Program-made: the position numbers and the translations under genes
NCBI GenBank assembly: GCA_038087875.1
Contig: CM075978.1
Span: forward strand, 174,778,001 to 174,842,000
From: Malacoraja senta
Lineage: Eukaryota
Direction of reading: 5' to 3'
DNA length: 64,000 nt
The notes under the pieces: model-generated
What the model was told of the DNA's origin: nothing
Databases searched by the model: none
Seen by the model: only the letters and a program-made list of their open reading frames with translations
Part shown: positions 6,366 to 55,148 of the stretch, piece after piece
How the letters are laid out: each line of letters starts with the position of its first letter
How positions within the stretch are numbered: the first letter of the stretch is position 1

Positions 6366-7009
6366 CACGGAGTAACAATGAATATAAATGGAGTGTAATT
6401 TGTATGGGATCTTTCTGTGTGAGGGCCCGTTGCCCCCTATGCCCAGTAGAGTAAGAGTCGTTATGATGGAAATTAGTTCAAAGATTATAAAGCGATTTTG
6501 GATGAATATTGATTACGTTCAATAAATGCGTTTGATTTATTTGGCTGCGCTCTTCCCAAGTCAGTGCTTTTGCCTTCGCTGTGCAGTTTGGCAACTGCGC
6601 AAGCCCGCTTTTCAATTGAATAAAATCGAGTGGACTGCACCCAAGATCAATGTATACATCAATTAAGTAAATTACCCGATTCCATTTATTTAACTCAAGT
6701 TAGGGAAAATGGACAGATATTGGGTGGTGGGACTAATACGGATGTATTATTTCTATGTGGACGAGTTCGTCTCACTATTTGCATGCTGCACGATGCATGG
6801 ATTGATCCTATGGAGATGACAATGTTGTCAGTCGGCCAATTTCATAGAGTCGCATAGAAACAGACGTTTTGGCCCAGCGTGGCATGCGGACCATCAAGAA
6901 CACGTCCATACTAATTTAGTTTACTAGAACTCGTTTCGTGGCCTGTTGTATCTTGGCAATTCAAGCGTTTATAAGGACGCTTCATGAATGTTGCAAGAGC
7001 AAGATTCCA

Positions 7010-7345
7010 AACAATGTGTGGAAAAGAACTGCAGAGGCTGGTTTAAATCGAAGGTAGAAACAAAATACTGGAGTAACTCAGCGGGATAGGCAGCATCTCT
7101 GGAGAGAAGGAATAGGCGAAATGTCAGGGGAGTGGGCGGGACAGAGATAGAATGTAGCCGGAGACAGTAAGACTGGTGGGAGAACTGGGAAGGGGGAGGG
7201 GATGGTTTAGGTGGGAAGCGACGGGTTGACCAGGGAATTGCGGACGGAACGATCCCTGCGGAAAGCAGCAAGTGGTGGAGATGGGAAGATGTGGCCAGTA
7301 GTGGGATCTCGTTGGAGGTGGCGAAAGTGTTGGAGGATTATATAC
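7010..7345 (-). mobile_element. Penelope-derived fragment and tail (related tails at ~8040-8150, 11010-11110, 24640-24710, 28670-28800)
   Basis: Recurrent tgctggagtaactcagcgg...gcagcatctctggag...gacgtttcgggtcgagacccttcttcag motif. Confidence 0.55.
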
Positions 7346-7741
7346 TTTTTCCAAACAATCTCGCAGGAGTAAATTCACGTTTGGATCCTCTCTAAACACC
7401 GTACATTTTGCATGTGTCTTTTTGTTTTTTTGTTTTGAAATAACGAGGCGCCTCCCTTTACAAAACGTATGCAATTTCAAAGAGCACAGTAGCCAAGCGG
7501 ATGGATACCGAAGTTTACTGGCGCATAACTTGGGCAACTGGTTGTACCCCATTTCACCCCTAGTGTTGAAGGTGAAGGGCTCAGTTGGTTAGGAGCTTTG
7601 ACGTCAAATCAGGGCTTGATGCTTGTAATATGGAACATCTCGCCATTTCCCTGAGGGCTGTTGCTGCTTTCTTGTTGTCAGATCATGGACGGGCTGATAA
7701 GTAACTACACAAATAACAAGACGTCACTTTGAGCACGGAAG

Positions 7742-7909
7742 CTACTTGGGAATCCATTCCGAATAGATACCATCTGCACCTCGCATTTGCTTTATTGGCT
7801 GTGAGTTGTCCGTGTAATTATCCCAACGATTTGTGTTTTCTCCTGTCTTGTTTCCCGTCGTAGCGAGAGGTGGGTAAATCACTTTACCAGGCATTGGTTT
7901 CTGCTTGGT
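7742..7909 (-). CDS. Gene 1 terminal cytoplasmic exon 3, copy A ([55 protein letters not shown])
   Basis: Acceptor ccctctaattttcatctcgcag, phase 0, ITIM-like VIYPPL, stop TAG at 7742-7744; probably the ancestral terminal exon. Confidence 0.72.
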   Translation of the reverse strand, partial: TKQKPMPGKVIYPPLATTGNKTGENTNRWDNYTDNSQPIKQMRGADGIYSEWIPK

Positions 7910-10900
7910 CTGCGAGATGAAAATTAGAGGGAACACATTAGTTCATGTTTTAGCTGCTTTGATCCTCACACAGACCCGAGCGTTTTGCAGGATCAGAAAT
8001 GAAAGTAATAAAATGAACGGGCAGATGTTTGTTTATACCAAAGATTGACACAAAAATGCTGGAGTACGTCAGCAGGTCAGGTCGCATCTCTGGAGAAATT
8101 GGATAATTTACGTTTCGGGTAGGGACCCTTCTTCAGTCTGACTGTCGGCGAGGGACTGGAGAGGGACACATGATCCCCAAGAGGATACATGATTGCGACC
8201 GTGGGACCAGTTAGCCGATTTGCAGTGGAAGGGGCGGGGAGGTGGTGGGGGGGGGGGGGGGGGAGGGTTCCGAATTCGTATAGTAAAAGGTACCTGTGCA
8301 TACAGCGTCCTTTCTTGATTCACCTGCCTTGGAACTTTCCGGGGTTTGCTCAGATTTAGCGCAGCATAAGGCACCATCGCTTCACCTGCACGTTGCATAG
8401 ACTGAACGAGAAAAGTATACATCTTCTCAACAAAGGTGCATTGATTCTTGCGCAGAACGACACTATCAGGCTCTAAAATGGTTTCGAGGGCCCATTACAT
8501 GAATAGTTCCAATGCCAATAACCCATGGGAACGATGTCGATCACTTCTCCTGCTCTAACATTACCCCAAAAAGCAAGTTAAATCAGATTAGCTAATTAAA
8601 TCGCAGTTTGGGGATGGCGGGGGGAGGCGTCCCGAGCCGTAAATGGCCTTTGTTTTCTTCGTAAACGTCTTATTTGCTTATTCCCAACATTTATATACGA
8701 AAAAAAGCAAATTACAGCCAATTGATTGAACGCAAACATTTTCTCTAGTTCCCGGTTTATCATTTGATTTTACATCAAAATTCAGCTTCTGTTTCCAAGT
8801 GAATGACAGACTGTGCTGCAGCATTGGCCTGTCATCTTCTGAGGGGATGCATCAAAAAATGTACAGAAGTCTTAGCTCAAATTTACAAAGCGTAATTTGA
8901 ACTACAACAAATTATGTGGACTGTTTGGATGCCCTTACTGAAAGCAAGGGACATTGTTACAAGAGACAGTTCAGAGAATGTTCACTGAGATGCCAGCGGG
9001 TGCTTTGGGGTTTCGCTTTACGAGGAAAGACAGGACAGCTTGATCCTGTGCTGATTGAACCTTCCCCCCTCCTCCGAGAAGGAGAGGGGATCGACATATT
9101 GCTGTTTTATGGGATTGACAGGGTAAACACTCGGGAATGCTGATAGTCATGAATGAATTTGGAAGCCGCAGTAGCCTCGGGAAATGGGGATGGTGGGGGG
9201 CATTGACATTGAAATGAGGGAATTCGCCAATCAGAAATTGAGACATTTGGGAGCGTCATGCTCCAGAAAGCCACATGAAAATGAAACTCTGATTATATTT
9301 ATCATCAGTATGAGAATCACAATACATGCGTGAATGGCGGAGGAGATGGACGAAGAATGTTGAATAAGCCGAAAGCCTATAGAATGGTGAAATAGACTCG
9401 CTTGGCTTAATGGTCACCTTTTGCTCCCGATGTGATCTGGAATTTTGAATTTTTCACTGAGATGTCGACAACAGGCTGGAACTGCAATTAGTATCTATCG
9501 TGTGTTGTCCTGCGACTATGTTCATGGGCTTGGGGAAGCGCTTCAGGGGAAACTTAAATTAAACAATTTGTGGCCTGTAGTTGCATGCAGGGCGTGCCAG
9601 GCAAATGCGGCAGATATGCATCCGTGATAGGCACTCGTGATTTTGCTCTGAATGTAAGAGCATTTTATTGACCCTCAGCATTTTGTAGGCACAGGTACGA
9701 TTTTTAGAAGTGAGTGCAATATACCAGCTTGGCAATGTGGATTTTCATCTAACATTCGAGTTAACGGACAAAACCCTTTGGACGGTTGTTACCGAGAGGT
9801 ACTGGTAGCAATAACACAGTTAATTAATTTGTGCTGTATAGAAGGCAAGCGCAGTATTTTAACTTTACTTATTTCATACATACCAGTTGCCCAGTAACAT
9901 CGGATCTTTCTTCTTCCTTCCGCGTACCTGGTCAATTATTAATATTAATTACTTATCTAGATTAAGAAATTGAATTTTGTCACCCGAAAAAGACCGTGGA
10001 CATAGAGTTAAGGGTTAATATAGATCGATGGGCATGATCATGTGCAAAGTCATGGCTTTATTGCCGAATCGTTATTAATAATAAGCAAATATGCCGATGC
10101 CGTCAGCCTTTTAATCCTAGTTTGTGTTTTTCGGAAGTCTTGTTGCTGGTAAGGAAATTGAATCTCCAGTTACCAACCTCTCCCAATTGCTGGGGTTCAT
10201 ATCATTTTGACCTGGGAGTGAGCAACTACCAAGTATCCCGTGAAATTGAAACATACTGAGTGGCCGTGAGGGCATCCCTATACTCAAACTGTAGGGATTT
10301 AGTTACCGGTGTTATTCTTTCAGTCTGGATAGTCGTTATTTGACTAATTCAAGTTACAATAAACATGAATGGCGAACAGCTAACGGAATAGCTTACGGGG
10401 GATGAATGAGTCCAGTGTACAAAAGGACAATAAGCTTAACTTTCGTGGTAATATGAATTTTCACAGGATCAATAATTAACGGACTGAAAATAGAAATATA
10501 GAAAGAAAGTGTACAGCAATGTGTACTCATAATGATTTCAGTAGGGGAATCATGCTGGACCAACGGCAAACTTCGTGAAAATTACAGAGAGACACAGCTA
10601 TGGTAATAAAGAAATTTAATCTATCTAGATTTCCAAAATAATGTCAAATAGGTTGGCGACAAAATAAAAATAAAAAAGATCAGAGAATAGTAATTATCGA
10701 CAGGTTGCAGAATAGATTGACGGCTGGCTGTGGGAAAGAAAGCAGACTAAAGTGCAACTGTTCACTAAAGTGCAACTGCTCACGGAAAGCAATGGGCGCA
10801 GTCGTCCCGCTTTCTCTTGTCTTGTTTCCCGTCGTAGCGAGAGGAGCGTAAATCACTTTATCATGCATTGGTTTCTGCTTGGTCTACGAGATAAAAATTA

Positions 10901-13900
10901 GGGAGAAAACATTAGTTCATTTTTAAAACTGCTTTGTATCTCACACAGACCCGAACGTTTTGCAGGATCAGAAATGAAAGTAATCAAATTAACGGGCAGA
11001 TGCTTGTTTATACCAAAGATTGACACACAATGCTGGAGTACGTCAGCGGGCCAGGTCGCATCTCTGGGGAAATTGGATAACTGACGTTTCGGGTAGGGAC
11101 CGTACTTCAGTCTGATTGTGTGTGNNNNNNNNNNNNNNNNNNNNNNNNNNNNNNNNNNNNNNNNNNNNNNNNNNNNNNNNNNNNNNNNNNNNNNNNNNNN
11201 NNNNNNNNNNNNNNNNNNNNNNNNNNNNNNNNNNNNNNNNNNNNNNNNNNNNNNNNNNNNNNNNNNNNNNNNNNNNNNNNNNNNNNNNNNNNNNNNNNNN
11301 NNNNNNNNNNNNNNNNNNNNNNNNNNNNNNNNNNNNNNNNNNNNNNNNNNNNNNGGGGTGATTACTGGAGCCGACGAAACAACAGTGCAAATCGGGCCTG
11401 GCATCAGATGACAGGTAAGCTGGTTCCCTGATAGGTTGACTGTCGGCTAGGGACTGGTGAGAGCACAAGAGGGATACATAATTGCGATCGTGGGACCAGT
11501 TAACCGATTTGCAGTGGAGTAGGTTGGGGGGGGGTGTCCGAGTTCGTATGTTAAAAGGTACCTGTGCATACAGCGTCCTTTCTTGATTCACCCGCCTTGG
11601 AACTTTCCGGCGTTTGCTCAGATTTAGCGCAGCATAAGGCACCATCGCTTCACCTGCACGTTGCATAGACTGAACGAGAAAAGTATACATCTTCTATACA
11701 AAGGTGCATTTATTCTTGCGCAGAACGACACCATCAGGCTCTAAAATGGTTTCGAGGGCCCATTACATGAATAGTTCCAATGCCAATAACCTATGGGCAC
11801 GATGTCGATCATTCTGCTGCTCTAACATTACCCCCAAAAGCAAGTTAGATCAAATTAGCTAATTAAATCGCAGTTTGTGGATGGCGGGGGGAGGCGTCGT
11901 AAACGTATCTATTTGCTTATTCTCAGCATTGTTTTTTTCGTAAACGTCTTTATTTGCTTATTCTCAGCATTTATATACGCAAAGTAGCAAATTACAGTCA
12001 ACTGATTGAGCGCAAACATTTTCTCTAGTTCCCTTTTTTCCCATTTGATTTCACATCTCAATTCAGCTTCTGTTTCCAAGTGAATGTCAGACTGTGCAGC
12101 AGCATTGACAACGGGGAGTGAATTCGCCTTTCAGCATTGACAACGGGGAGTGAATTCGCCTTTCAGAAATTGAGGAAGCAACATGAAGATGAAACACTGA
12201 TTATATTTGTCACCAGCATGTGAATCACAATATATGCATGGATGGCGGAGGAGATGGACGAAGAATGTTGAATCAGCCGGTAACCTATTGTATGGGGAAA
12301 TTGACTCGATTGGCTTAATGGTCACCTTTTGCTCCGGATATGATCCTGAATTTTGAATTCATCACTGAGATGTCGACGACAGGCTGGAACTGCAATTAAT
12401 ACCTATGTTGTGTTGTCCTGCGACTATGGGCATGGGCTTGGGAAGGCGCTTCAGGGGAAAGTTAAATGAAACTATTAGTGGCCAGTAGTTTCATGCTGTG
12501 CGTGCCAGGCAAATACGGCAGATATGCATCCGTGATAGACACTCATGATTTTGCTCTGGATGTAAGAGCATTTAATAGATCTTGGGCATTTTGTAGACAA
12601 CAGGTACGATTTTTAGAAGTGAGTGCAATATATCAGCTTGGCAATATGGATTTTCATCTAGCATTCGTGTTAACGGACAAAGCCCTTTGGGCGGCTGTTA
12701 CCGAGAGGTACTGGCAGCAATAAAACTGTTAATAAATTTGTGCTGTATAGAAGGCAAACGCAGTGTTTTAACTTTACTTATTTCATACATACCAGTTGCC
12801 CAGTAACATCGGATCTTTCTTCTTCCTTCCGCGTACCTGGTCAATTATTAATATTAATTACTTAACGGGATTAAAAAATTGAATTTTGTCACCCGAAAAA
12901 GACGGTGGTGTGATAGAGTTAGGGGTTAATATAGATCAATGGGCATAATCATGTGCAAAGTCATGGCTTTATTGCCGAATCGTTGTTAATAATAGAGCAA
13001 ATATGCCGATGCCTTCAGCCTTTTAATCCTAGTTTGTGTTTTTCGGGAGTCTTGTTGCTGGTACGGAAATGGAATCTCCAGTTACCAACCTCTCCCATTT
13101 GCTGGGGTTCATGACATTTTGACCTGGGAGTGAGCAACTACCACGTACCCCGTGGAAATAAAACATACCGAGTGGCCGTGAGGGCATCCCGATACTGAAA
13201 CTGTCAGGATTTAGTTACCGGTGTTATTCTTTCAGTCTGGATAATCGTTGTTTGACTAATTCAAGTTACAATAAACATGAATGGCGAACAGGTATCGGAA
13301 TACTTTGAAGGGAGGTGAAAGAGTCCAGCGCACAAAAGGGTAATAACCTTAACTTTCATAGTAACAGGAAATGTCACAGGATCAATAATTAACGGACAGA
13401 AAATAGTAATATGGAAAGAAAGTGTACAACAATGTGTACTCATAATGATTTCAGAAGAGGAATCATGCTGGACCAACACCAAACCTCATGAAAATTACAG
13501 AGAGACAGAGCTATGGTAATGAAGAAAATATAATCTGTCTCGATTTCCAAAATAATATCAAATAGGTTGGCGACAAAATATAAATGAAAAACGATCAGAG
13601 AATAGTAATTATCGACAGGTTGCAGCATTAATTGACGGCTGGCTGTGGGAAAGAAAACAGACTAATGTGCAATTGTTCACTGAAGTGCAACTGCTCACAG
13701 AAAACAATGGGCGCATTTATGTCGCTACCAGTACTGCTGATTATTAGGGCTATAATCGAAACTGTTGTCGAAGTTAGGGTAACACATGTTTGGAAGAGTA
13801 ATCCAGTACAGAGGGGAACAACACATTAGGGTAGGATATTAGTGGACTTAAAAATGGACGGAACGGTGAATTCATCATGCAAAGTAATGAATTTTCGCAG

Positions 13901-16900
13901 AAGGAATATGGAAGCCACACACTATGGCATAAGATACACCGCACAGGAACAGACCTCTCGGCCCACAACGGCTTTGCCGAACGCGCTGACACTTTAAATT
14001 AAGCTACTTTGCCCGTACGTCTTCCATATCCCTCCACCCCCTGCATATCCATGTGCCTATTCAAAAGCTTCTGAAATGTCACCAGTACATCTGCCTCCAC
14101 CGACAGCCCTGACAGCGCATTCGAGGCATCCATCTGTCTGTTGAAGAAGCATGCCCCGCATACCTCCTTTAAACTTTGCCCCCTCTCACCTTAAACTTAT
14201 GCCCTCTAATCGTTGATACTGTATTTCTATACTGGGATAAAGGTTCTGACTGCCTACCGCATCTATGCCTCTCATAAATTTACACACTTATATCAAATCT
14301 CTCTGCTGGCATATGCATCCCAGTGAAATCACTGCAAGTCTGTGCAAACCTTTCTTATGGTTAATACGTTGTAATCCTGACAAACCTCCTCTGCACCAAT
14401 AAGCCAAGGAGCACGCCTTCATGTGGCCTCATCAAGGAGCTCACCTTCATAATTTCCTCAATACAATCAAGCAAGTTTATAAGACATGACTCGTCATGGA
14501 CAAAGCCGCGATGACTGTCCCTCATTAGCCGATTTTCTTTGAAATGAGAGTAAATCCTATCTCAAAGTGTCCTCTGCAATAGGTTCCTAACCAGTGACAT
14601 GCTGCTCACCGGTCTGTATTGCCTGGAATATCTCCGCTTCGCTGCTGAATCAAGATTGCTCTCCAGTCCTCCAGGGACTCGGCTGTGACTAGAGAAAATC
14701 TAAAGATCAGCTCTCAATAGCCTGTGATAGGTTCAACCAAGCCATGCGATTTATCCACTTTAATGCTCTTCAAAGGCCCAAACACCACCTCCTTCTTGAT
14801 GTTCAGCTGCCCAATATATCACTTAACCGGACATTGATCTCACTCTGCTGCATACTCAATTTTCCGTGATGAATAGAGATGCAAAGTTCTAATTACTTGG
14901 AAGGTGCCAGTCCATGCGATATGGAGTAAATGGATATTAGATAGAACTCGCACCAGTCAGGAGCATCATAAAACACAAATGAAACACGGTTGAAGGTAGG
15001 AGACTGAAAACGGGAGACATTATGCTAAGCACATTGGACCACAGTCGAGGTAACCAGGAGCGTTCTGGTGTGGCCGGTTTCAAAAAATCTTCAAGAAAAT
15101 GTGAACTATTCATATCAGGAATATAAATAAAGATCACACTCGGTCCCTTTGATTTTGTTAAGAAAGATAAGGGATGACGACGTGGTTGTCTTTAAAATTA
15201 ATGGAAGTTCTGAGAACATTGATATGGAAAGAATGATGCATCTTGTTGGAAAGTTAAAAAACATAGACGGTCATTTGAAGGTAGGACTAAAGAAACGTTA
15301 CGTTAGAAAAAAAATAATTGGGATATTGGAATCAAGGATATTGGAAGCGATGTGCACGCACGACATGGGAAGCCGAGCAAGCAAGCGAGAGAGAAATAAT
15401 AAAGGTTCATGGTCTTAGATTTATAGGACAAATGTGAGAAACTACGAGTGGAGGGCGAACTCAGGCCTGCGCCGCAATGTAATCGGCTGTAATGAAAAAA
15501 TAATGTTTATACCTTTGAGAGTTCCTATGTTTCCCTTTCTGGAGCTATAACCCATTGGAAAAAAATGCTTAAATTATTTCTTACCTTTAATTTTCCTTGC
15601 AGTACAACGCTTTGCAATGACAAGAGCCAATAGGAACGATACAAAACCGCTCACTGCGCATATAGAAATCATGACGTAATTGACGTAACCTGTAAGATTG
15701 AAATGCATCAGGCACATATGAAAATCGTAGCTGCTGAATTCGGAAAATCCCACGTCACTTGTATCTGACGTAATACGCCGCAAGCTCTGAAATTCAGTAA
15801 CAATTTGAACGTTTGTACAAAGCAAAACTTGACAGATGAGAATTTCCAGAAAATGAATCTGGCGAAAATGTAAATCGTTCTGCCTGATGAACAAAGGATA
15901 TTTAACTAAAATTGACGGAGTTGCGAGAAAGGCTGTCAACAGTTACAGCTGATTTTGTAGACCAGCCCTGTGGTTATTCATAACTATTTTCAAGCCAATA
16001 GAACTGTAGTTATTGGTCCCTAAACATCCCCCCACCAACATTTATGGAGTCAAAGAGTCATTCAGTGTGGAAACAGTTCCTTCGGCCCAATTTTACCATG
16101 CAGACCAACATCCCCCATCTACACTAGGTCCCCTTGCCTGCGTTTGGCCCATTACCCTCTAAAGCTATCCTATCCATGCACCAGTCCAAGTGTATTTTAA
16201 ACGTTGTTATGGCACCTGGCTCAACGATCTCCCCTGATAGCTCGTTCCATATACTCACCACAATTTGTGTAAAAAAAGTTGACCCTCAGGCAGATTAAAT
16301 ATTCCCCCCCTCACCTTAAAGCGTTGTCCTCTAGTTTTTGATTCTCCTACTCTGGGCAAAAGAATCTGTACGTTTGCCGTTTCTGTTTATCTCATTATCC
16401 TATACACCCTTCATACCCCTACAGTCCAAAGAATACAGTGTTATTCTGCTCAATCTCTCCCCATAGCTCATGCCCTCGAGTCCTGGGAATGCTCTTCTCT
16501 GCACCCTTCCCAGCTTAACAGCTTATTTCTTCGATCAAACTGGCCAAACCTGAACACAATACTCCAAATGTGGCCTCACCAATATCCTGTGCGACTGTAA
16601 TATGTCATCGTAACTTCTATACTCAATATTCGTAATGACGAAGCCTTTTTGACCAGTAACACCAGTTTCAAGGAACTATGTACCTGCACTCCCAGACCCC
16701 GCTGATTGCCAACACTCCTAGGTGCCCTGCTATTCATTGTTTGACCTTCAGAAAATGCAACACCTCGCACTTATCTGCATTTAACTCCATTAACCATTCC
16801 TCACTCTACCTGCTCAACAGATCAACATCCAGTTGCAATTGTTGATAACCATCTTCAGTCACTTGCCAATTTCCCAAGATTAGGTCGAGGGCTGTCCTCT

Positions 16901-19900
16901 CCGTTGTAGGGCCATACACGTATTGGCTAAGGATATTGTATTGAACATATCTGACCAATTCCTGCTGATCAATGTCCTTAACATTATGACAATCCCAGTC
17001 TAAACAGTGAATGGTATAATATATGGGCGAAGAAATGGTAGATGCAGTTTAATCAGAGCAAGTGTGTGCTGTTGCGCTACGGAAATCGAATGTACCGTAA
17101 ATTTCAAGACCTTGAATCATAGGTCTAGGAACACAGTTCCTTGAGAATGGTAACACAAATTGGTAGCGTGGTAAAGAATGCATTTAGTATATTTGCCATC
17201 ATGGGTCGTAGCACTGAGTACAAGAGCCATGTGATGAGTGGTAACCATGTTGCAACTTTATAAAACTTTGCTTCGGCCGCGTTTGGAACGTTGTGTGCCG
17301 TTCTGCTCGCTCCATTACGGCAAGAATGTGGAGACTTTTGATAGGGCGCAGAACAGATTTATTAAAACAATAGTTAAAATACATTTGGACAGGTACATGT
17401 ATAGGAAAGGTTTAGAAGGATAAGGGCTAAACGTAGGCAAGTGGGACGTGTAGATGGAGCAACTAGGTCGGCATAGGCATGTTGAGCAGAAAGGCCTGTA
17501 TCCATGCTCCATAACTCTCATAGAATGCCGACTGGATTAGAGGATATTGGCCAGCAAGAGAGCTTGGATAACCTTGGATTTTTTTTTCTAGGCCATCGGA
17601 AGTTGAGGGAGACATAAGTACTTACAATTATGAGGGGCATAGTCAGGATAGATGGTTAGAAATCTTTTCCCAGGGAAAACATGAGAAATAATCGCGGGCA
17701 TAACTTTAAGATCAGAGATGTGTGGGGCAAGTTGTTTTTATACAGAGAGTGGTGTGTGCCGGGAAAACGTTGCCAGGGGTGGTGGTGTTGCAGGCAGAAT
17801 CGAATGTGGGCTTTATGAGTCTTTTGTGGAGGCACATCGACATGCAAAGTGTGGAAGGAAATAGATCACTTATAGGGAGTGGAATTATTTTAACTTGCAT
17901 CATGTACGGCACGGACAGTCTGATCCTTGGTGTACTGTTCTATATTATATGTCAAACAAATAAAACTGGCTTTTAGGCCTCATTTTATGAAACTAAGCAT
18001 AGTTTTCATACTTTACAAGAAAAATAGCTTTAAAAAGACCAACCGGAGTATCTGCTTTTTCCTTGTTAAAACGAAACGCCAATATTAGCGATAATATTTA
18101 GTTGATACTTCAGATTAAATCGGAGAGAGCAAACCGGCGGTCCGACTCACAGCTTTAAAATTCAGGAATTTCAATGAGTATATTTTTAGCGTGTTACTTT
18201 ATTTCAAGGTTCAAATTGTTGGAAAATTCCTGACTAGTTATGTCATGTTCAGGGAATGAGGGACGGCGTTTCAGCTCCGTGGCCTTACGGCAAGGAGCGG
18301 ATAGTAGCTCGTGTATCCATCTAACACCTCTGCGCTGATTTACCTGGCCGTAGAGGCAGAATGGCAGAGCGAGATATGTTAGTCGGACAACGGGATCACG
18401 GGAAATGTTAGAATCAAACAATTGTCCCACGCGGTGGCCGGGAAATATTCGTGTGTTTGTTAGAGGAGTGCTGTCATCAAAAACAAAATAATAGTAGACG
18501 CGAGGAGGTCGTTGATATACTGCAGAAATTAGCAGACTCGGATCAATTGTATTTTAAAACGTATGATGTAACTGTTCAGATGTAAGTTGAAACATACAGG
18601 GACATGCTTATATTTTGAGGAATATGGAAGCATACTGTAAACCGGAAAACATATTACAAAATTCTGGTACGCTGATAAAAGATTTAAGGCAGATCTTGGA
18701 ACTTTGAGCCTCATGGAAGCAGTGGATCCAAAAGGACGTGATGCCGTGGTAAATGCTTGAAAATCACTACTTTTTATTGAGGTCTGTGCACAGGTTCTTT
18801 GCGAGAATGATAGATGAGATCATTGTGGCCGGTTCAGTGAAGAGTTGGGAGAAGTTTGGGGTCTTCTCGTTTGGGCCGAAATGAAGGGTAATTGGTCACG
18901 GGAGATGCTTTACTGGGGCAATCTATTTCCGCTGAAGAAAAGGGAAAACCAGCGGTTATACCGTATCGAGGAGATTTGTGGGAATAGCTTTCTTGAGATT
19001 CGGAGTGTAGCGCCTGACACGCTGGAGGTAGCAGCTCCCAATGAATTTGTCAAAAGACAATTTTGCGTGTACTTGATGAGAACATTTGCAGCCACATGGA
19101 AATCTAGCGGATGTGATTATAATAGACGGACCTTCAAGGTTTATAGTTTCAGGCCAGGACTAATGGTAATTCCTATCATGCGACATTTTGTGAGATCTCC
19201 AACTTTACGTATCTTTCTATGGTAATAGAGATGCGCAGTCTTACCTGTGTCGGAGTTGATGACAACGTAAGTGGCTGCTGCAGGAACACGGTGGGTTACA
19301 TGATTCACAAGGCAGGTGTAAACGGTGCCGCTCGGGACATACTGTGTCACTGATAATCGGCTGGAAGCTTCATACAATCCATCTGCGGTGGGCTTGTTGC
19401 TATTAACCAAATCCGTTGTAGTTTTTCTACCATCTTGATACCACATGAAGCTGATATTCTTTGGGTAAAAGGGAGATGTCGCGCAGAGAATAACGAAGGA
19501 TTCCGTCTTCTCGGGAATTCCAGAATAAATGTTCAATGGAGTTGGCGGAACTAGGGAATGAAGGTTAGTGATACGTTTATATTAGTAGAAAATGAGTGCG
19601 CGGAGTGTGAATGGTTTCTGTGAGGCGGATTCGCGCGTTCATTGTGCTTTTATAATAATGTAAACGGAACCTTTATACCCGAATTTAAATCAGAGATAAC
19701 GTTTACTCGTGCTGTCTAGTGAAGAAAAACATGATGGTAAATGTATATCCCACCCTGCGGCCTGTAGAGACTCTTCTCCGACTCCCAATTCCTCCGTCTA
19801 CGCCGCTTCTGTGCCCAAGATGAGGTGTTCCATACCAGGACATCTGAGATGTCCTCATTCAATCGGAAACAGGGATTCCTCCCTTCCATCATAAACGATG

Positions 19901-21770
19901 CCGTCACTGGGGTCTCCTCGATGTCCCGCAGCTCCGCGCTTGCTCCCCCTCCCCCAGTCGCAACAGGGACATAGTCCCCCTAGTCCTCACCGTTCTCCCC
20001 AACAGCCGTCGCATACAGCACATAATTCTCCGGCATTCTCGCCACCTCCAACGGGATCCTACCACTAGCCAACACTTTAACTCCCCGTCCCATTCCCACA
20101 CTGATCTTTTTGTCCTGGGCCTCCTCCATTGTCAAAGTGAGGCCCAGCGCAAATTGGAGGAACAATACCTCGTAATTCGTTTGGGCAGCTTACACCCCAG
20201 CGGTATGAATATTAACCTATAATTTCAAGTACCCCTTGCCTTCGCTCTCTCTCCACCCATCCCCTTCCCAATTCTCCGACTAGTCTGACTGTCCTCGTTT
20301 ACATTTCATCTCTGTTTACTTTATTGTTCCCTTTTCCTAGCTAACAATGATATATTCTACATTTCCCCTGATCGGCATCCCCTTTGTCTCGTTTTCACAC
20401 CATACACTTCCTTATTTCTGTATCTCCGTCTCCACTGACAGTGTGAAGAAGGGTCTCGACCCGAAACGTCACCCATTCCTTCTACCCAGAGATGCTGCCA
20501 GTCCCGCTGAATGACGCCAGCATTTTGTGTCTATCTTCGGTTTAAACCAGCATCTGCAGTTCCCACAACATGATGGTACATTCTTGCAACACTGCCGTCT
20601 CGGGTAAATGCCAAACATGTAAATGTTCTGCTGCCGACTATTTCCCCGATCATTTGCAAACATTGTGAATAAACAATTCTGAAAATTGTAATTTAGTCGT
20701 GATATGAGAATTTTAGGTGGTAGGTCCCGAACACCATGCAGGTCATTTGAAATGTTGAGGGAAATTTGGGTTCCGATTCTTCGCTATTTTACGTTCGCAA
20801 CATTAGCGTCCAAACTTATTCATGTGGAGGCCACGGTTACAATTGAATGACTCTAACGTCCAATATAAAAACAAACAGTCCTCTTGATCTAACGCAGGCG
20901 AAATGGTACATCATATGGGGTCACCCACTACGACAGTTGCACATGTCTTTTCCGTATTCACAACGGGCACTACAATGCTACCTGTATTGTACTAATGTTA
21001 TGCTGTGCTTTCGAAATAAACTTCCAATACATAAGATACGTTTTGATTAATATCGCTAAAACGTATTGTTTATACATATCAGCATGCAGACCATCTATGG
21101 TATGATTTACCAATTGCAATATTAATAGTATTCATCTGGCTGTATGAATGATTCAAATCTGAAAAAACACGTTACTTGCAGGGCAATATCACAGTCGCGA
21201 AATCGCATTCGTTACACGTTTAAACCTACTTACCCAACACAACTAAAGTCGACCCGGTTCCGTTGCCAACTAAAGTGCCCCAGAGCGTGATGGTACAATA
21301 ATATACTCCGGCATCCTGTCGGCTCACATTGACTATTTTCAGGAAGCCACTGAATTTAGTACCGACGCCGGAAACCGTTCTCCCGTCAGGGTCTGAGATG
21401 AAAAAAACATTTTCACCCTGTTTCCACCAATGTACGCTTACGCTGGGCCCTTCACGAAAGAAGGGAACAGAGCAGTGAAACGAAGCATTTTGGCCCGTCG
21501 AGACATTCACTGCTTGAGGAACTTGAGTTACTTTGTCTGCAGTTTTCCCATTACCTAAAGGAAAGAAAAACAGGCCCGATTAGGAATATTTCACCCCAGA
21601 AGGTTAAACGTAGGAGCAGGGCTAATTGCAAATGGAAATAAAGACACGCATTAAAGAATCCTTGAATATATGTAGGTTTTAGTCTGTATAAAGGGTTTAT
21701 GGGGATGCCATGTACCTGTGAAAATTATCCCCCAAAAAGAGAAACAGCGAAGTGCAATGCTGGACAACAT
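7742..21770 (-). CDS. Multi-exon gene 1: non-rearranging VJ-C1-TM IgSF receptor with ITIM/ITSM-type tail (NKp30/SIRP/PRARP-like architecture). Exons 21770-21716, 21554-21234, 19550-19245, 15689-15585, then cytoplasmic exons copy B (12836-12793, 11669-11562, 10883-10680; 380 aa) and/or copy A (9927-9884, 8401-8294, 7909-7742; 368 aa)
   Basis: All exons have GT/AG boundaries and compatible phases (1-1-1-1-0-0), with no in-frame stop when spliced. Summed CDS is 1143 nt with tail B or 1107 nt with tail A. Domains recognised from canonical Ig Cys/Trp motifs. Confidence 0.88.
8294..8401 (-). CDS. Gene 1 cytoplasmic exon 2, copy A ([36 protein letters not shown])
   Basis: 106/108 nt identical to copy B, intact splice sites, ITIM VPYAAL. 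Confidence 0.75.
9884..9927 (-). CDS. Gene 1 cytoplasmic exon 1, distal copy A
   Basis: 44/44 nt identical to 12793-12836, with intact splice sites. Confidence 0.65.
10680..10883 (-). CDS. Gene 1 cytoplasmic exon 3, copy B ([24 protein letters not shown]... running across the duplication junction)
   Basis: Acceptor ctaatttttatctcgtag, phase 0, ITIM VIYAPL. Homology to copy A ends at 10811; the frame continues into junction/intron-derived sequence to TGA at 10680. Confidence 0.65.
   Translation of the reverse strand, partial: TKQKPMHDKVIYAPLATTGNKTRESGTTAPIAFREQLHFSEQLHFSLLSFPQPAVNLFCNLSIITIL
11125..11354. other. Assembly gap (230 N)
   Basis: Run of n. Confidence 1.
11562..11669 (-). CDS. 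Gene 1 cytoplasmic exon 2, copy B ([36 protein letters not shown])
   Basis: 108 nt, phase 0-0, acceptor ttttctcgttcag, donor CAG|GTACCT. ITIM VPYAAL plus a second tyrosine motif TLYAQ. Confidence 0.82.
12793..12836 (-). CDS. Gene 1 cytoplasmic exon 1, proximal copy B ([15 protein letters not shown])
   Basis: 44 nt, phase 1 to 0, ccag| and CTG|GTATGT; identical to copy A; bridges the TM and ITIM exons in frame. Confidence 0.75.
13900..14850 (-). mobile_element. Degenerate CR1 fragments (intron of gene 1)
   Basis: Decayed PEDWR..PGNYRPVS, SHRGFV..SCLINL and 3' end motifs on the minus strand. Confidence 0.65.
15585..15689 (-). CDS. Gene 1 transmembrane exon [35 protein letters not shown]
   Basis: 105 nt, phase 1-1, acceptor tttcaatcttacag, donor AG|GTAAGA. 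About 22 uncharged residues followed by a basic stop-transfer segment. Confidence 0.88.
16030..17860. mobile_element. Degenerate CR1 fragments, minus (~16030-16860) and plus (~17010-17860)
   Basis: [20 protein letters not shown]; antisense ggtgaggccacatttggagta. Confidence 0.7.
19245..19550 (-). CDS. Gene 1 C1-set Ig exon
   Basis: 306 nt, phase 1-1, acceptor ccttcattccctag, donor AG|[15 protein letters not shown]...[21 protein letters not shown]...[13 protein letters not shown]...TVYTCLVNH shows the C1 signatures C-x4-FYP-x2-I-x3-W, DGxY-x-x-S-S-x-L and YxCxVxH. Confidence 0.95.
19690..20570 (+). mobile_element. Penelope-like element 3' part (RT C-terminus/GIY-YIG end) in the V-C1 intron
   Basis: [31 protein letters not shown]; [19 protein letters not shown]; characteristic tail. 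Confidence 0.7.
21234..21554 (-). CDS. Gene 1 V-set Ig exon with germline-encoded J-like strand
   Basis: 321 nt, phase 1-1, acceptor tttttctttcctttag, donor G|[34 protein letters not shown]...VHWWKQ...[36 protein letters not shown] contains the B-strand Cys, C-strand Trp, DxGxYYC and GxGSxLxV. Confidence 0.95.
21716..21770 (-). CDS. Gene 1 leader (signal peptide) exon [18 protein letters not shown](G)
   Basis: 55 nt from ATG to a phase-1 donor AG|GTACAT; hydrophobic core; 161-nt intron to the V exon acceptor. Confidence 0.8.
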
Positions 21771-29574: not shown

Positions 29575-30188
29575 GGTTGGTACCCCCATGAGTATTGATT
29601 TAGGGCGTAAGCTGCTGATTTCCATTTCTGGAACCCCGGCAATGAGGACCATCGTTCCTTTTGAGATTCATACAAGCAGACCAGATGGTGGTATTATTCC
29701 GGGAAGTGTGCCANNNNNNNNNNNNNNNNNNNNNNNNNNNNNNNNNNNNNNNNNNNNNNNNNNNNNNNNNNNNNNNNNNNNNNNNNNNNNNNNNNNNNNN
29801 NNNNNNNNNNNNNNNNNNNNNNNNNNNNNNNNNNNNNNNNNNNNNNNNNNNNNNNNNNNNNNNNNNNNNNNNNNNNNNNNNNNNNNNNNNNNNNNNNNNN
29901 NNNACCTAAAGTTGTTGGACAGCTTGTTCTATTTGATCTTCCGTTTGTGCACGTCTAATTGATTGCATTAGTCGAAACAGGGGTTGGTTGCAATTTTCCA
30001 CCCCTCAGACACCTTGATAGCGATAGACTTCGGGAGGTTACATCCTTTAGAGTGGATGAGCACATGTGTACGCACCCAACAAATGGAAAGATTATTCCTT
30101 CCCACATAATATTAGGATATATTTATATATATAATGTATGAATGTAGCTCCATTTTACGTGTTGTATCGTTGAATCCTCTCCTTTCCT
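29575..30188 (-). pseudogene. Endogenous retrovirus env remnant (SU N-terminal region)
   Basis: YVGRNNLSICWVRTHVLIHSKG; CWVR (30070-30081) is one substitution from the SU CWVC motif; collinear with the TM remnant. Confidence 0.55.
29714..29903. other. Assembly gap (190 N)
   Basis: Run of n. Confidence 1.
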
Positions 30189-31410: not shown

Positions 31411-32481
31411 ATGAGTAAATTGCCTCCAGCTGTGAGCCCTCAGAGAGCTGTGAATAAGCTGTCGAAAAAGTTCGAAGCAGAAGTTACCTCTGAAGTCTCT
31501 GAAGTGGCTGCAGAAATGGATACAAGATCTAAGAAAGACTTTGATGACTTGAAGAAATCAATGAAAAATTTGAAAGATGAGATCTCGGATAATAGGGTGG
31601 AAGATAAGAAGGAAATGAAGGAAAATTCGGCAAAAATGATGGAAGGAATGGAGAAGATGATGAAGGATTTAAACGCTGGTAACCAGAAGAATATGACGGA
31701 TTTACTGGACATTATGAATAAACGAATTGATGAGGTGAAAGATGGACTATCAGAGAAAATGGATAAGATGGATGTAATTACTACGGATAAGTTCACGGCT
31801 GTACTTGAAACAGTAGCTGCAGGTATGCACACAATTACGGAATTGGAGAAAAATACGGCTCGACTGGTTGAAGACATGGCGAAATTGAGGCAAGAACATG
31901 AGCAAATGAGGCGAGAAAACGAACAAGCATCACTACAAATGGGGACTCAATTAGAGAAAGTCTCATTCAAATGCCTGGACCTGGAAGCTCGCTCTAGACG
32001 CCAGAATTTGAGAATTCTTGGTGTTTCAGAGGGGGCAGAAGGGGAACAGGTACGTGAATTTGCCATGGGCTTGTTGAAACAACTGTTGAATCTTTCCAAG
32101 GAACCGAAAATCGAAGTGGCTCATCGTGTCCCAAGATTTGGAAAAAGATCTGATGCGGGAAAAGCTTATCCACGACATATTATAGTGAAATTTCGAGATA
32201 CTGCAGAACTGGAATACGTTATGAGTAAAATCAAATATGGTGTACAATTACGGCTGGACAAGGACACTATTAAGATATTCAGGGACTACCCACATGAAAT
32301 TGTGCAAAAAAGAAACAAATTTGATAAGGTTAAAGATCTTTTAAGAGGGAGAGAAGGGGTCAGATTTGGGTTTTTTTATCCCGCGAAAATGCGTATTTCC
32401 TTTAATGGTCTTGAAAAGTCATTTGTTAAGCCTGAAGACGCTTTCAAATATGCCCAAACGATTGTTGAAAAACAGAAATAA
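31411..32481 (+). CDS. L1 ORF1p (coiled coil, RRM and CTD), intact, 356 aa
   Basis: L1 ORF1 motifs LEARSRRQNLRILGVSEG, IEVAHRV, PRHIIVKF, IFRDYP, FFYPAKMRI. Confidence 0.93.
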   Translation: MSKLPPAVSPQRAVNKLSKKFEAEVTSEVSEVAAEMDTRSKKDFDDLKKSMKNLKDEISDNRVEDKKEMKENSAKMMEGMEKMMKDLNAGNQKNMTDLLDIMNKRIDEVKDGLSEKMDKMDVITTDKFTAVLETVAAGMHTITELEKNTARLVEDMAKLRQEHEQMRRENEQASLQMGTQLEKVSFKCLDLEARSRRQNLRILGVSEGAEGEQVREFAMGLLKQLLNLSKEPKIEVAHRVPRFGKRSDAGKAYPRHIIVKFRDTAELEYVMSKIKYGVQLRLDKDTIKIFRDYPHEIVQKRNKFDKVKDLLRGREGVRFGFFYPAKMRISFNGLEKSFVKPEDAFKYAQTIVEKQK

Positions 32482-33287: not shown

Positions 33288-36200
33288 ATGCATGACACCA
33301 CACAAAAGAACCTAGGAGGAATCTCATTTTGTAGTTGGAATATAAGAGGTATTAACGAACCTATCAAAAGGGGTAAGATATTAGCTCAGCTAAAAATGTA
33401 TAATTCTGACATTATCTTCCTACAAGAAACACACCTAAAACCTCAGGACCAAGTTAGGCTGAGGGTGAAATGGATAGGTCAAACATACCACTCTTCATTC
33501 ACTTCAAAATCTAGAGGCACGTCAATTATCATAAGAAAAGGTATACCATTTAAAGCAAAGAATATTATAACAGATATAGAAGGGAGATACCTAATAGTTA
33601 ATGGAGAAATCCATGACACTCCACTTACTTTGGTAAATATATATGCCCCTAACTTTGATAACCGCCACTTTTTCAATAAAATCTTCAATATAATTGCAGA
33701 GTCAAACTATCAAAATGTTATAATAGGCGGAGACTTTAACTGTGTTTTAGATCCGTACTTAGATAAATCAAGTCAAAAACAGAGAGGGAATATGAAATCG
33801 AAAACTGGGGAACTCCTCAATACCTACATAAATAACACTAATATAGCAGATGTTTGGAGAATTGTGAATCCAACTGGCAGGGAATATTCGTTTTACTCAA
33901 TGGTACATAAGACATACTCACGTATAGACTACTTTCTGCTGGATACAAAATTAATCCCCCAAACATCTAATGCAATATACCATACAAATTCAATTTCAGA
34001 CCATTCTCCACTAACTTTCTTTTTAAAACTGGAAGGATTGTCTAAGAATAATTCATTCTGGAGATTTAACTCTCAAATTTTAAAAGATCCACAACCGAGT
34101 ATATATTTAAAAGAACAAATGGAGGTCTTTTTTCAAACAAATGATACTTCAGATATATCGCCTACTTTACTTTGGGAATCTTTTAAAGCATACATTAGGG
34201 GTATTATAATTTCATATCAAGCTTTTCAAAATAAAAAGAATAAGAATGAACAAAGACAGTTAGAAGAACTTATTAGACAAATGGATATAGATAATGCTAA
34301 AGATCCATCAATAGATAAACATAATAAAATAATAATTTTAAAATTTAAATTAAATAAATTATTATCTGCCAAACTTATAAGACTTTTTCAAATTACAAAA
34401 CAAGAGCACTTTGAATTTGGGGATAAACCGCATAAACTTTTGGCTCGCCAGCTAAAAAAACGAGAAAAGGAACATACTATACCAAAGATCAAATCAGATA
34501 AAGGGGAATTATTAACAACACCGAAGGATATTAATAAAAGATTTGCGCAATTTTACGAGAATTTGTATACATCTAAAACGATAATTGATTCCAATAATAT
34601 CACAAAGTTCTTGGATACCTGTAATCTTCCAAAGTTAGAGCTGAAGGAACAAGAGGAACTGGGTGCACAAATCTCAATTAAGGAATTAGAAGATACAATA
34701 AACTCACTAAAAAATGGAAAAACACCAGGCCCTGATGGATTTACTAATGAATTTTATAAAAGCTTTTATGATAAAATAATACCAAGATTACAAAAAATGT
34801 ACCAATACGCTTTTAAAAAACGAATACTACCTGATACATTAGCGGAATCAACGATTACATTAATACCTAAGAAAAATAAAGATTTAGAAGAACCTGGCTC
34901 ATATAGAGCTATAGCATTGTTAAACACATATCAAAAAATATTAGCGAAAACATTAGCTAGAAGATTAAGTAAATACATTAGTAAATTAATAAACCCAGAT
35001 CAGACAGGGTTTATCCCTAAGAGATACTCTTCTAATAATATGAGACGTCTACTCAACATAATGCACTCACACAAATCTGAAGATCAAGAATTATCAATTA
35101 TTTCGCTGGATGCTGAAAAAGCATTTGATCAAGTAGAATGGAATTATATGGATAAAGTATTACAAAAATTTCAACTGGGAGAGAATTTTATTTTATGGAT
35201 TAAGTTACTATATAACAAACCTACAGCTAGAATACTTACTAATAACATATTATCCTCGAAATTTCAACTATCAAGGGGAAATAGACAAGGATGCTCATTA
35301 TCACCACAGCTGTTTGCTCTCATTATTGAACCGCTAGCAGAAAAAATTAGAATACACCCTGATATTCATGGATATAATACTAAAGACTCATATAATAAAA
35401 TATCTTTATACGCGGATGATATATTATTGTATATTACAAAACCTCAAATCACTATACCAAACATATTAAATTTAATTGAAGACTTCGGATCTTTTTCTGG
35501 ATATAGAATAAATTGGAATAAAAGTGAAATTATGTCAATAAAACCGAAAGATTCAACACATCTTTTAAAATTCCCTTTTAAAATAGCTACAGAAAAATTT
35601 AAATATTTGGGAATCGAAATTACCAGAACATATCAAGGTATGTTCAGGGCAAATTTTGACCCCCTACTGAATACATTAATTAAATTCTGGAAAACGCTCC
35701 CGATGTCTTTAATAGGCCGAATAAACGCAATAAAAATGATCTTTTTACCACAAATTTTATACCTATTTCAATCAATTCCTATATACTTACCTAAGAAGTT
35801 TTTTAAAAAACTCGACTCAGATATCACTAATTTTATATGGGACTATAAATCACATAGAATACAAAAAACCCATCTGAATAAATCTAAAGTATTGGGGGGT
35901 CTAGCACTACCTAATTTTATGTATTATTATTGGTCAGTAAATATTAAAAACATGATTCAACTGATGGATAACTCCGCCCAGCAAGTAGACTGGATTGTAA
36001 TGGAGAAAGAGGATTGCTCCTCTAGAAACATTGGAGCGATCCTCCTCTCTCCAATGAAATTGAATAACATAAACTATAATAAGAACCCAATTATTCATAG
36101 TACAATCCGTATTTGGAAACAGATAAAACAAAATTTAAAATTAAGAAACTTATCACTTTTATTACCTATAGTCAATAACCCTTCGTTTAGTCCTTCTATT

Positions 36201-54238: not shown

Positions 54239-54349
54239 CTCTGCATATGTGGTTCTTTCCTCCGTGTCTTTCATACTTGAAACCATCTTAGACCTGGATA
54301 AATCTAATGCTGCATATGAGCAGAACTCATCATTTTCTTTTCCCGTCCG
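54239..54349 (-). CDS. Gene 2 cytoplasmic exon 2 (RTGKENDEFCSYAALDLSRSKMVSSMKDTEERTTYAE)
   Basis: 111 nt, phase 0-0, acceptor ttattttgcag, donor GAG|GTAGGT. YAALDLS and ERTTYAE align with gene 1 YAALNLS and ERTLYAQ. Confidence 0.85.
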
Positions 54350-55148
54350 CTGCAAAATAATGTTTTATTCATGTGTATTACTCCTTATATGCAATTGAAT
54401 TCAGATGGTGAATGCAAAAAGGCAATGTAATATTTTCAATTTCTCAAAAGAGTTTAAAAAAATGCCATGGCAGCATGCCGAAAATCTTTACACGTTTGAC
54501 TACTTTTATCAATGACTTCCACTTTTTATTTTAAAACGCTGGAACTTTTTGGGTCCTGCTTGTTAATCGATTTGAGCTCATCCTAATTGTTTCTGTGGTG
54601 TACGACTCCGGAATCACGTTGTACCCATACAGAATCAGGCCATCCCGCCCACCGGGCTATGCTGATCTTTATGGCCTTCTACATTAATACCACTTGCTTT
54701 TATTCCCCACCTTATTCCCCATCTATTTACCTTGGTATCCTAAAGATTTTCATACATAGAAATTGCATTTACGTCCATCGTCTGCTCTTGCTGCGCTTTT
54801 CAGGTCTCAACTACTCCTTCTACAAAAACCGTACCACTCAAATCCCCTTTCAAATGTATGTTCCCCATATTAAGCGTTTGTCCCCTCGCTTTTAATACCT
54901 CTTGCAGGGAAATGAAAATCTCCCATCAATGCCTTTGATTTTACTTCGGAGTCACGTGAGTGACTACGTGAAGAACCCCGCCAGTGCGCCTGCGCGTCAT
55001 TACGTCAGACGCCTTGACGCAAACGGACGTGAGGAGCAGAGCTCCTCTAATGGATTTGTAGTTTTTAACTACAAGGTAAGTAAAAACATTTTTCAGTATT
55101 TTCAGGTCCGTTTACTGTGGGTCTGTGGGAATTTTTTCCACAGACGCC

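What the first reader, a model, noticed from the sequence alone, without database searches (positions are those of the whole stretch)
7837..13715. Whole signalling tail duplicated in tandem, with exons far more conserved than introns
Seen: two ~3 kb units each carry cyt1, cyt2 and cyt3. Cyt1 is 44/44 identical and cyt2 106/108 identical between copies (the shared part of cyt3 is 68/73), all splice sites are intact, and aligned intron stretches look only about 80-90% identical by eye with several indels. Inference: both copies have been kept under selection or exon-focused gene conversion. One ectodomain could therefore be spliced to alternative or additive inhibitory tails, for example TM-cyt1B-cyt2B-cyt2A-cyt3A, which is in frame (phase 0-0).
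Basis: partly seen in the sequence, partly recalled or inferred. Interest (0 to 1): 0.8.

Follow-up and report, generated by a model that had tools for sequence, protein, structure and literature searches.

The report
Doubled inhibitory tail in receptor gene
A minus-strand immune-receptor gene of a cartilaginous fish carries a real tandem duplication of its three cytoplasmic exons, and a spliced transcript from a related organism indicates that the two tails are joined into one longer tail with four inhibitory tyrosine motifs rather than used as alternatives.

Summary
Two collinear units on the minus strand, B at 10811-13727 and A at 7837-10810, each carry cyt1 (44 nt), cyt2 (108 nt) and the first 73 nt of cyt3. 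Identities are 44/44, 106/108 and 68/73.

Aligned intron is 89-91% identical. Exons are more conserved (Fisher p=1e-4, or 0.002 against cleanly aligned intron; window permutation P=0.0003). The excess comes from cyt1 and cyt2; cyt3 alone is not different (P=0.28).

The N gap (11125-11354) lies inside the intron between cyt2B and cyt3B, next to a repeat fragment found only in unit B. It interrupts no exon or reading frame. I did not fill it.

A misassembly is unlikely. The junction sits in contiguous sequence, a second sample holds both units, and a 450-nt spliced contig from another organism crosses the junction.

That contig joins 10866-10785 to cyt1A, cyt2A and cyt3A through three GT-AG introns. 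Truncated cyt3B therefore became a 100-nt internal exon using a formerly intronic donor at 10783. The tails are concatenated in frame, giving four ITIM motifs.

Six of the seven exonic differences are non-synonymous, and perfect tracts run into the introns. This favours gene conversion or nucleotide-level constraint over protein-level selection alone.

The scan also noted the donor on this same stretch (s1-141385).

The parts
15585..15689 (-). Transmembrane exon (105 nt, phase 1 in and phase 1 out; donor GTAAGA). It has an uncharged hydrophobic core followed by a basic stop-transfer stretch.
   Evidence: Sequence read; peptide printed.
10811..13727 (-). Tail unit B, the upstream copy in the mRNA: intron, cyt1B, intron, cyt2B, intron, then the first 73 nt of cyt3.
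   Evidence: Alignment; repeats.
12793..12836 (-). cyt1B, 44 nt, phase 1 to 0, identical to cyt1A.
11562..11669 (-). cyt2B, 108 nt, phase 0 to 0. It holds the ITIM VPYAAL and the motif TLYAQ, and has 2 differences from cyt2A, both non-synonymous.
11355..11437 (.). B-specific fragment of a dispersed repeat directly beside the gap, with no counterpart in unit A.
   Evidence: alignment; 8 other genomic copies at about 80% identity.
11125..11354 (.). Assembly gap (230 N) inside the cyt2B-cyt3B intron. It was not filled. It breaks no exon or reading frame.
   Evidence: No laid contig bridges it.
10784..10883 (-). Chimeric internal exon cyt3B' (100 nt, phase 0 to 1): 73 nt of cyt3 with the ITIM VIYAPL, plus 27 nt of former intron. 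It ends at donor GTGAGC (GT at 10783-10782).
   Evidence: In one search the spliced contig covers 10785-10866 and is joined to cyt1A, with a substituted base at 10784.
10801..10811 (.). Duplication junction: the end of cyt3 homology meets sequence from the intron upstream of cyt1 (source copy about 13700-13727).
7837..10810 (-). Tail unit A, the downstream copy, which runs on into the complete cyt3A.
9884..9927 (-). cyt1A, 44 nt. It sits inside a 99-nt tract (9857-9955) that is identical between the units.
   Evidence: joints.
8294..8401 (-). cyt2A, 108 nt, with the ITIM VPYAAL.
   Evidence: joints 8401/9884 and 7909/8294.
7743..7909 (-). cyt3A, the terminal coding exon, with the ITIM VIYPPL and stop TAG at 7745-7743. 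The 3' UTR continues below 7743.
   Evidence: contig piece 7742-7909.
8055..8145 (+). SINE-like element in the cyt2-cyt3 intron of unit A. Its counterpart in unit B is at 11029-11119 (91% identical), so it predates the duplication.
   Evidence: families D9 and D10.

Best explanation
An intragenic tandem duplication of about 3 kb copied the block [intron, cyt1, intron, cyt2, intron, first 73 nt of cyt3] of a minus-strand V-set/C1-set/TM receptor gene. One breakpoint fell in the coding part of the terminal exon. The other fell in the intron upstream of cyt1. The truncated upstream cyt3 copy reads on for 27 nt into former intron and there meets a pre-existing GT (GTGAGC). This makes a 100-nt internal exon that ends in phase 1, which is the phase cyt1 needs. 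The inferred mRNA is TM, cyt1B, cyt2B, cyt3B', cyt1A, cyt2A, cyt3A. It encodes one open tail with two copies of a two-ITIM module, four ITIMs in total: VPYAAL, VIYAPL, VPYAAL, VIYPPL. By analogy with other ITIM receptors, phosphorylated tyrosines would recruit SH2-domain phosphatases, and doubling the module should raise the valency or strength of inhibitory signalling. Shown here: the duplication, the intact splice sites and open frame, and the splice chain cyt3B' to cyt1A to cyt2A to cyt3A in a transcript contig of a related organism. Inferred: inclusion of cyt1B and cyt2B, expression in the source species, and ITIM function. Because both copies are coding, both are constrained. The near-identity of cyt1 and cyt2, including synonymous sites and flanking intron, is best explained by added gene conversion or by nucleotide-level (splicing) constraint.
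For: The units are collinear at 86-90% identity, and they share a SINE at the same intronic position. The junction lies in contiguous sequence 314 nt from the gap. Contigs from a second sample (X2) match both units with no differences. One 450-nt contig of run X25 (another organism, 15 differences) lies on 10866-10785, 9927-9884, 8401-8294 and 7909-7742, with three joints whose skipped ends are CT..AC on the + strand, that is GT..AG on the gene strand. It crosses the junction-specific 26 nt, so the duplication predates the split of the two organisms and is transcribed. The composite ORF is open and holds 4 ITIM matches. TM spliced directly to cyt3B' meets a stop after 7 codons (read from the sequence), so a productive mRNA needs cyt1B upstream. 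Exons are more conserved than introns, and the identical tracts are longer than chance (P=0.006 and 0.0002). The intact cyt2 exon occurs only at these two places in the 1.94-Gb genome. The two DNA-level paralogues have single, decayed tails.
Against: The RNA evidence is one low-depth contig (about 6x) from a different organism, in a run whose RNA status is only guessed. It stops 17 nt short of the cyt3B' acceptor and says nothing about cyt2B or cyt1B. No RNA run of the source species was found. pN (0.036) is not below pS (0.019), so protein-level constraint between the copies is not demonstrated. cyt3 shows no excess conservation. The gap was not bridged. ITIM function rests on motif matches only.
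Confidence: 0.7

Rival explanations
1. The two tails are alternatives. Transcripts carry either the B or the A exons, for example TM-cyt1B-cyt2B-cyt3A, TM-cyt1A-cyt2A-cyt3A, the reader's TM-cyt1B-cyt2B-cyt2A-cyt3A, or a B-terminal isoform that reads through cyt3B to the stop near 10683 and uses the ATTAAA at 10620. This would give receptors with slightly different or differently sized tails.
For: All these combinations are in frame. The duplicated exons have equal lengths and phases. An ATTAAA lies 63 nt after the read-through stop.
Against: The only spliced contig carries cyt3B' together with cyt1A, cyt2A and cyt3A. It shows no cyt2B-cyt2A or cyt2B-cyt3A joint. X25 has no depth over the read-through region 10540-10739. 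The A and B proteins differ at only 6 residues, so alternatives would be nearly equivalent.
Confidence: 0.17
2. Unit B is a non-functional relic. The duplication is real but one copy is skipped or the gene is decaying, and the exon similarity reflects gene conversion or chance alone.
For: pN/pS is not below 1 between the copies. The related paralogues have decayed tails. There is no RNA from the source species.
Against: All six acceptors and five donors are intact and the frame is open through both units after about 10% neutral divergence. cyt3B' is spliced into a transcript in another organism. cyt1 and cyt2 conservation is significant.
Confidence: 0.1
3. Assembly artefact: a single unit was represented twice, either as two haplotypes placed in tandem or as a scaffolding error at the gap.
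For: An unbridged gap lies inside unit B. Short-read contigs cannot span 3 kb.
Against: The copies differ by 9-11% plus large indels and a B-only repeat insertion, which is unlike allelic variation. The sequence on the low-coordinate side of the gap (7000-11124) by itself contains two cyt3/intron copies and the junction. The two sides of the gap do not overlap each other; they abut collinearly against unit A. A second sample holds both units. The junction is present in another organism's transcript.
Confidence: 0.03

Closest known systems
Intragenic duplication of adjacent exon blocks in elasmobranch VJ/C1 genes (UrIg2 C2-C3 pairs, IgW, IgNAR), homogenised by gene conversion (PMC12227049)
   Same: Both are tandem duplications of a block of neighbouring exons inside one gene of a non-rearranging VJ + C1 type receptor. 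The copies are translated in series, and there are signs of sequence homogenisation. The C1 exon here has UrIg2 as its best solved relative (E 2.8e-16).
   Different: There the duplicated exons encode extracellular Ig domains with symmetric phase-1 boundaries. Here the signalling tail is duplicated, one breakpoint cut the terminal coding exon, and the frame was restored by a former intronic donor. Membership of this gene in UrIg/UrIg2 is not established: it has one C domain only, and its V exon does not retrieve UrIg2.
Multi-ITIM inhibitory Ig-superfamily receptors such as SIRP-alpha, PIR-B/LILRB and PECAM-1 (my own knowledge)
   Same: Both have Ig ectodomains, an uncharged TM, and a cytoplasmic tail with paired (I/V/L/S)xYxx(I/V/L) motifs encoded by several short exons. 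SIRP-alpha likewise carries two pairs of tyrosine motifs and a V domain with a J-like end followed by C1 domains.
   Different: No sequence relationship of the tail to any protein was found among 1.84 billion representatives. The ITIM spacing within a module is 36 residues. Phosphatase recruitment is untested.
Tandem exon duplication that gives mutually exclusive alternative exons (general phenomenon, my own knowledge)
   Same: The duplicated exons have identical length and phase and lie next to each other.
   Different: The available transcript shows the copies used together, not exclusively. The duplicated unit is three exons, not one.

Membership tests
Genuine intragenic tandem duplication (not an artefact) | Two adjacent collinear copies with a unique junction inside contiguous sequence | tested here: met
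   The junction at about 10801-10811 lies 314 nt from the gap.
Genuine intragenic tandem duplication (not an artefact) | Both copies and the junction are seen in independent data | tested here: met
   X2 (a second sample) has contigs with no differences on both units, and the X25 contig from another organism crosses the junction.
Genuine intragenic tandem duplication (not an artefact) | A single molecule spans both units and the gap | not testable with these tools
   Only short contigs were available, and none bridges 11125-11354.
ITIM-bearing inhibitory Ig-superfamily receptor | Extracellular Ig domains | tested here: met
   Pfam V-set (E 8.5e-9) and Ig_3 on the exon at 21226-21510; C1-set (E 2.6e-12) on the exon at 19246-19548.
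ITIM-bearing inhibitory Ig-superfamily receptor | (I/V/L/S)xYxx(I/V/L) motifs in the cytoplasmic tail, and a TM without a charged residue | tested here: met
   Four motif matches in the composite tail. The TM peptide has no charged residue in its core.
ITIM-bearing inhibitory Ig-superfamily receptor | Tyrosine phosphorylation and SHP-1/SHP-2/SHIP recruitment | not testable with these tools
   This needs biochemical assays.
Mutually exclusive or alternative duplicated exons | A transcript carries one copy only | tested here: not met
   The X25 contig carries cyt3B' together with cyt1A, cyt2A and cyt3A. Only the 3' 400 nt of the transcript is covered.
UrIg/UrIg2 family | A VJ exon plus several C1-type domains, with V and C both closest to UrIg/UrIg2 | tested here: inconclusive
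   The C1 exon's best PDB hit is UrIg2, at about 25 bits per domain. The top 60 PDB hits of the V exon hold no UrIg2. Only one C exon was found between V and TM.
Exons under protein-level purifying selection in both copies | pN clearly below pS between the copies | tested here: not met
   pN 0.036, pS 0.019; 6 non-synonymous and 1 synonymous difference. The numbers are small.
Gene conversion between the copies | Identical tracts longer than expected that are not bounded by exon edges | tested here: met
   Tracts of 99 nt and 84 nt, with P=0.006 and 0.0002 when mismatches are permuted. Both extend into intron. Splicing-related constraint could mimic this.

The most novel reading that the evidence does not exclude
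A tandem duplication that broke the terminal coding exon was rescued by a ready-made intronic GT, which turned the stump into an in-frame internal exon. This doubled a two-ITIM signalling module in a non-rearranging VJ-C1 receptor. The arrangement is conserved between at least two organisms. cyt1 and cyt2 are kept near-identical by conversion, while the downstream cyt3 ITIM flank diverges. Regulated skipping of the 252-nt B block could then switch the receptor between two and four ITIMs.
Probability: 0.5. Interest if true: 0.55.

Novelty: new variant of a known kind. Interest (0 to 1): 0.45.

Why it matters
This is a datable, step-by-step example of how an inhibitory immune receptor can gain signalling valency. 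The steps are duplication of an exon block, exonisation of the junction, and then possibly conversion. It occurs in a lineage (cartilaginous fish) and a gene type (germline-joined VJ + C1) that matter for the origin of antigen receptors. It shows that the exon-block duplication known for the ectodomains of UrIg2, IgW and IgNAR also acts on cytoplasmic tails. It also gives a natural two-ITIM versus four-ITIM pair for testing how motif number tunes inhibition. It is a gene-structure finding in one gene family, not a new kind of system.

Tried and rejected
- **RNA runs of the source species.** None was found in either run search, so expression in this species is untested.
- **Upstream splices.** The single read-laying run could not show the cyt2B to cyt3B' splice or the TM to cyt1B splice, and it did not bridge the gap.
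- **Short-sided joints.** Joints such as 8136 to 11412 in X1 and X2 have sides of only 20-24 nt at SINE or poly-G sequence. I treated them as repeat cross-links, not structure.
- **Annotated homologues of the tail.** A phmmer search of 1.84 billion representatives with cyt3A gave only two unrelated repetitive proteins. There is therefore no public protein model to compare.
- **Other intact cyt2 copies.** A genome-wide six-frame search found only these two.
- **Haplotype misassembly.** Rejected on divergence, the position of the junction, the second sample and the cross-organism transcript.
- **Protein-level purifying selection as the sole cause of exon conservation.** Rejected: pN is not below pS and synonymous sites are too similar.
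- **Literature.** A search for ITIM, SIRP or C1-set receptors in cartilaginous fish gave nothing specific. Only the UrIg2 paper was relevant.
- **Full-length protein searches.** Not attempted, because a spliced protein cannot be given by reference.
Full report
**Setting.** The window is eukaryotic. It is C2:174778001-174842000 of a 1.94-Gb genome and is rich in SINE/LINE sequence typical of cartilaginous fish. The gene lies on the minus strand. It has a V-set exon with a J-like end (21226-21510) and a C1-set exon (19246-19548), both matched in Pfam. It has a TM exon at 15585-15689 that ends in phase 1 at donor GTAAGA. The cytoplasmic exons in question follow. The C1 exon's best solved relative is shark UrIg2 (E 2.8e-16). 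The V exon does not retrieve UrIg2, so family membership stays open.

**Observation.** Self-comparison shows three collinear direct-repeat blocks at 86-90% identity. In a global alignment, unit B (10811-13727, upstream in the mRNA) and unit A (7837-10810) each carry three exons.
- cyt1 is 44 nt: 12793-12836 in B and 9884-9927 in A.
- cyt2 is 108 nt: 11562-11669 in B and 8294-8401 in A.
- The first 73 nt of cyt3 start at 10883 in B and at 7909 in A.

All acceptors and donors are canonical. Both units carry the same SINE-like element in the cyt2-cyt3 intron, so the element predates the duplication.

**The gap.** The 230 N at 11125-11354 lie inside the cyt2B-cyt3B intron, 208 nt after cyt2B and 241 nt before the cyt3B acceptor. 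No exon or reading frame is affected. The two flanks align collinearly to one point of unit A (8145/8146). Unit B has an extra 83 nt (11355-11437) that is a dispersed repeat with 8 other copies in the genome. The gap therefore probably sits in a B-specific repeat insertion. No laid contig bridges it. I did not try to fill it.

**Exon versus intron divergence.**
- Exons show 7 mismatches in 225 columns. Introns show 249 in 2334. Fisher p=1e-4.
- Against intron columns more than 15 nt from any indel (91.2% identical), p=0.0018. For cyt1 and cyt2 alone, p=0.0003.
- Random intronic window triplets of the same sizes reach 7 or fewer mismatches with P=0.0003.
- Taken singly, cyt1 gives P=0.008, cyt2 P<5e-5 and cyt3 P=0.28. 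The effect is real but confined to cyt1 and cyt2.
- Six of the seven differences are non-synonymous. pN is 0.036 and pS is 0.019. Synonymous sites are far less diverged than introns (p about 0.02-0.04).
- The two longest perfect tracts are 99 nt (9857-9955, around the 44-nt cyt1) and 84 nt (8344-8427, the 5' part of cyt2 plus 26 nt of intron). Both are longer than chance (P=0.006 and 0.0002) and both run into intron.

This pattern fits gene conversion or nucleotide-level (splicing) constraint better than protein-level selection alone. In cyt3, unit B keeps the state of the paralogues at four of the five differing sites, so the A copy is the derived one.

**Is it an artefact?** The copies differ by 9-11% plus large indels. 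The junction (about 10801-10811) lies in contiguous sequence 314 nt from the gap. The low-coordinate contig alone contains two cyt3/intron copies. The sides of the gap abut rather than overlap. Contigs from a second sample (X2) match both units without differences. Misassembly is very unlikely.

**Transcript evidence.** No RNA run of the source organism was found. Run X25 comes from another organism, and its RNA status is only guessed. It holds one 450-nt contig that lies on four pieces: 10866-10785, 9927-9884, 8401-8294 and 7909-7742. The three joints have skipped ends that are GT..AG on the gene strand. One substituted base sits at 10784. Three removed canonical introns show that the contig is RNA-derived. 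It includes the junction-specific sequence, so the duplication predates the split of the two organisms. It also shows what the truncated cyt3B does. Together with 27 nt of former intron it forms a 100-nt internal exon (10784-10883) that ends at donor GTGAGC. This exon is spliced to cyt1A, cyt2A and cyt3A. The lengths 100 + 44 make 144 nt, so the frame is kept. The five reported base differences in that contig introduce no stop.

**Inferred product.** TM spliced directly to cyt3B' meets a stop after seven codons (read from the sequence), so cyt1B must precede it in a productive mRNA. The simplest mRNA is TM, cyt1B, cyt2B, cyt3B', cyt1A, cyt2A, cyt3A. Its frame is open and it carries four ITIM matches: VPYAAL twice, VIYAPL and VIYPPL. 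It also carries two TLYAQT motifs and a C-terminal GIYSEW. Each unit is a two-ITIM module with 36 residues between the tyrosines, so the duplication doubled the module. That these motifs recruit SH2 phosphatases is inferred from established ITIM biology and was not tested.

**Context in the genome.** The intact cyt2 exon exists only at these two places. Two DNA-level paralogues, at C2:175.095 Mb and on contig C5343, have single tail units. Both carry the same SINE/(TTTAG)n insertion inside cyt2 just after the ITIM tyrosine codon, along with other lesions. The doubling is therefore specific to this gene and younger than its split from those copies. More distant family members flank the gene. 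Deep-intron divergence gives a Jukes-Cantor distance of about 0.096. I would read this as a duplication tens of millions of years old, but that depends on a substitution rate I did not measure.

**Comparison with what is known.** Duplication of adjacent exon pairs followed by homogenisation through gene conversion is described for the ectodomains of UrIg2, IgW and IgNAR (PMC12227049). Multi-ITIM tails are common in inhibitory Ig-superfamily receptors. What is unusual here is that the whole signalling tail was duplicated, that a breakpoint cut the terminal exon, and that a former intronic donor restored the frame. No annotated protein resembling the tail was found.

**Verdict.** This is a new variant of a known kind and of moderate interest.

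Noticed in passing
L013:4424-4676 (G000:C2:175096424-175096676) and L014:6099-6451 (G000:C5343): Two paralogous single-unit tails carry the same SINE plus (TTTAG)n insertion inside cyt2, immediately after the ITIM tyrosine codon. In L013 the cyt1 acceptor is also CTG instead of CAG, and L013 and L015 have a 2-nt deletion before the cyt3 stop. These look like decayed tails, and the unplaced contig C5343 may be a duplicate or alternative copy of the C2 locus.
   Followed up: partly
window 19246-19548 (-): The C1-set exon's best solved relative is shark UrIg2 (PDB 9dmx, E 2.8e-16). The V exon (21229-21510) does not retrieve UrIg2 among its top 60 PDB hits. The gene may be a distant relative of the UrIg group with a single C domain.
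   Followed up: partly
G000:C2:174766297-174769187 (L016/L017, minus strand; about 9-12 kb before the window start): A neighbouring paralogue has a V exon (32% identical), a C1 exon (38%) and a TM-like exon. Its tail is not recognisably similar to this one.
   Followed up: partly
window 54239-54355 (-): A cyt2-like exon of a diverged paralogue (38% identical over 39 aa, with YAAL and TYAE motifs). It is consistent with a tandem receptor cluster.
   Followed up: no
window 10784-10811 vs 13700-13727: The 27-28 nt of former intron that became coding in cyt3B' differ from their source copy at 7 of 28 positions, against about 10.7% elsewhere (binomial P about 0.025). This could be remodelling after exonisation or untidy breakpoint repair.
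   Followed up: partly
window 10001-10200 and about 12913-13110: An intronic patch upstream of cyt1 is 95-97% identical between the units and contains an AATAAA on the gene strand (10062 in unit A). It is unexplained. It could be a conversion tract or an alternative polyadenylation site.
   Followed up: no
window about 8828-9266: A stretch of about 437 nt is present in unit A and absent from unit B. Part of it (8830-9060) is shared with the paralogue on C2:175.095 Mb, so unit B probably carries a deletion. Unit B has a 32-nt tandem repeat at that spot (12102-12165).
   Followed up: partly
window 33288-37070 (+) and 31411-32481 (+): A 1260-aa uninterrupted ORF with an endonuclease/reverse-transcriptase look is preceded by a 356-aa coiled-coil ORF. 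Together they look like an apparently intact LINE element.
   Followed up: no
window 29714-29903: A second assembly gap (190 N) lies inside retroelement-like sequence.
   Followed up: no
window 7873 and 8344 (run X25): In the other organism's transcript the cyt3A ITIM reads VIYAPL, the same as unit B and the paralogues, rather than VIYPPL. The variable cyt2 codon, which is Pro in unit A and Arg in unit B, is Ser. The ITIM-flanking residues are therefore changing quickly.
   Followed up: partly
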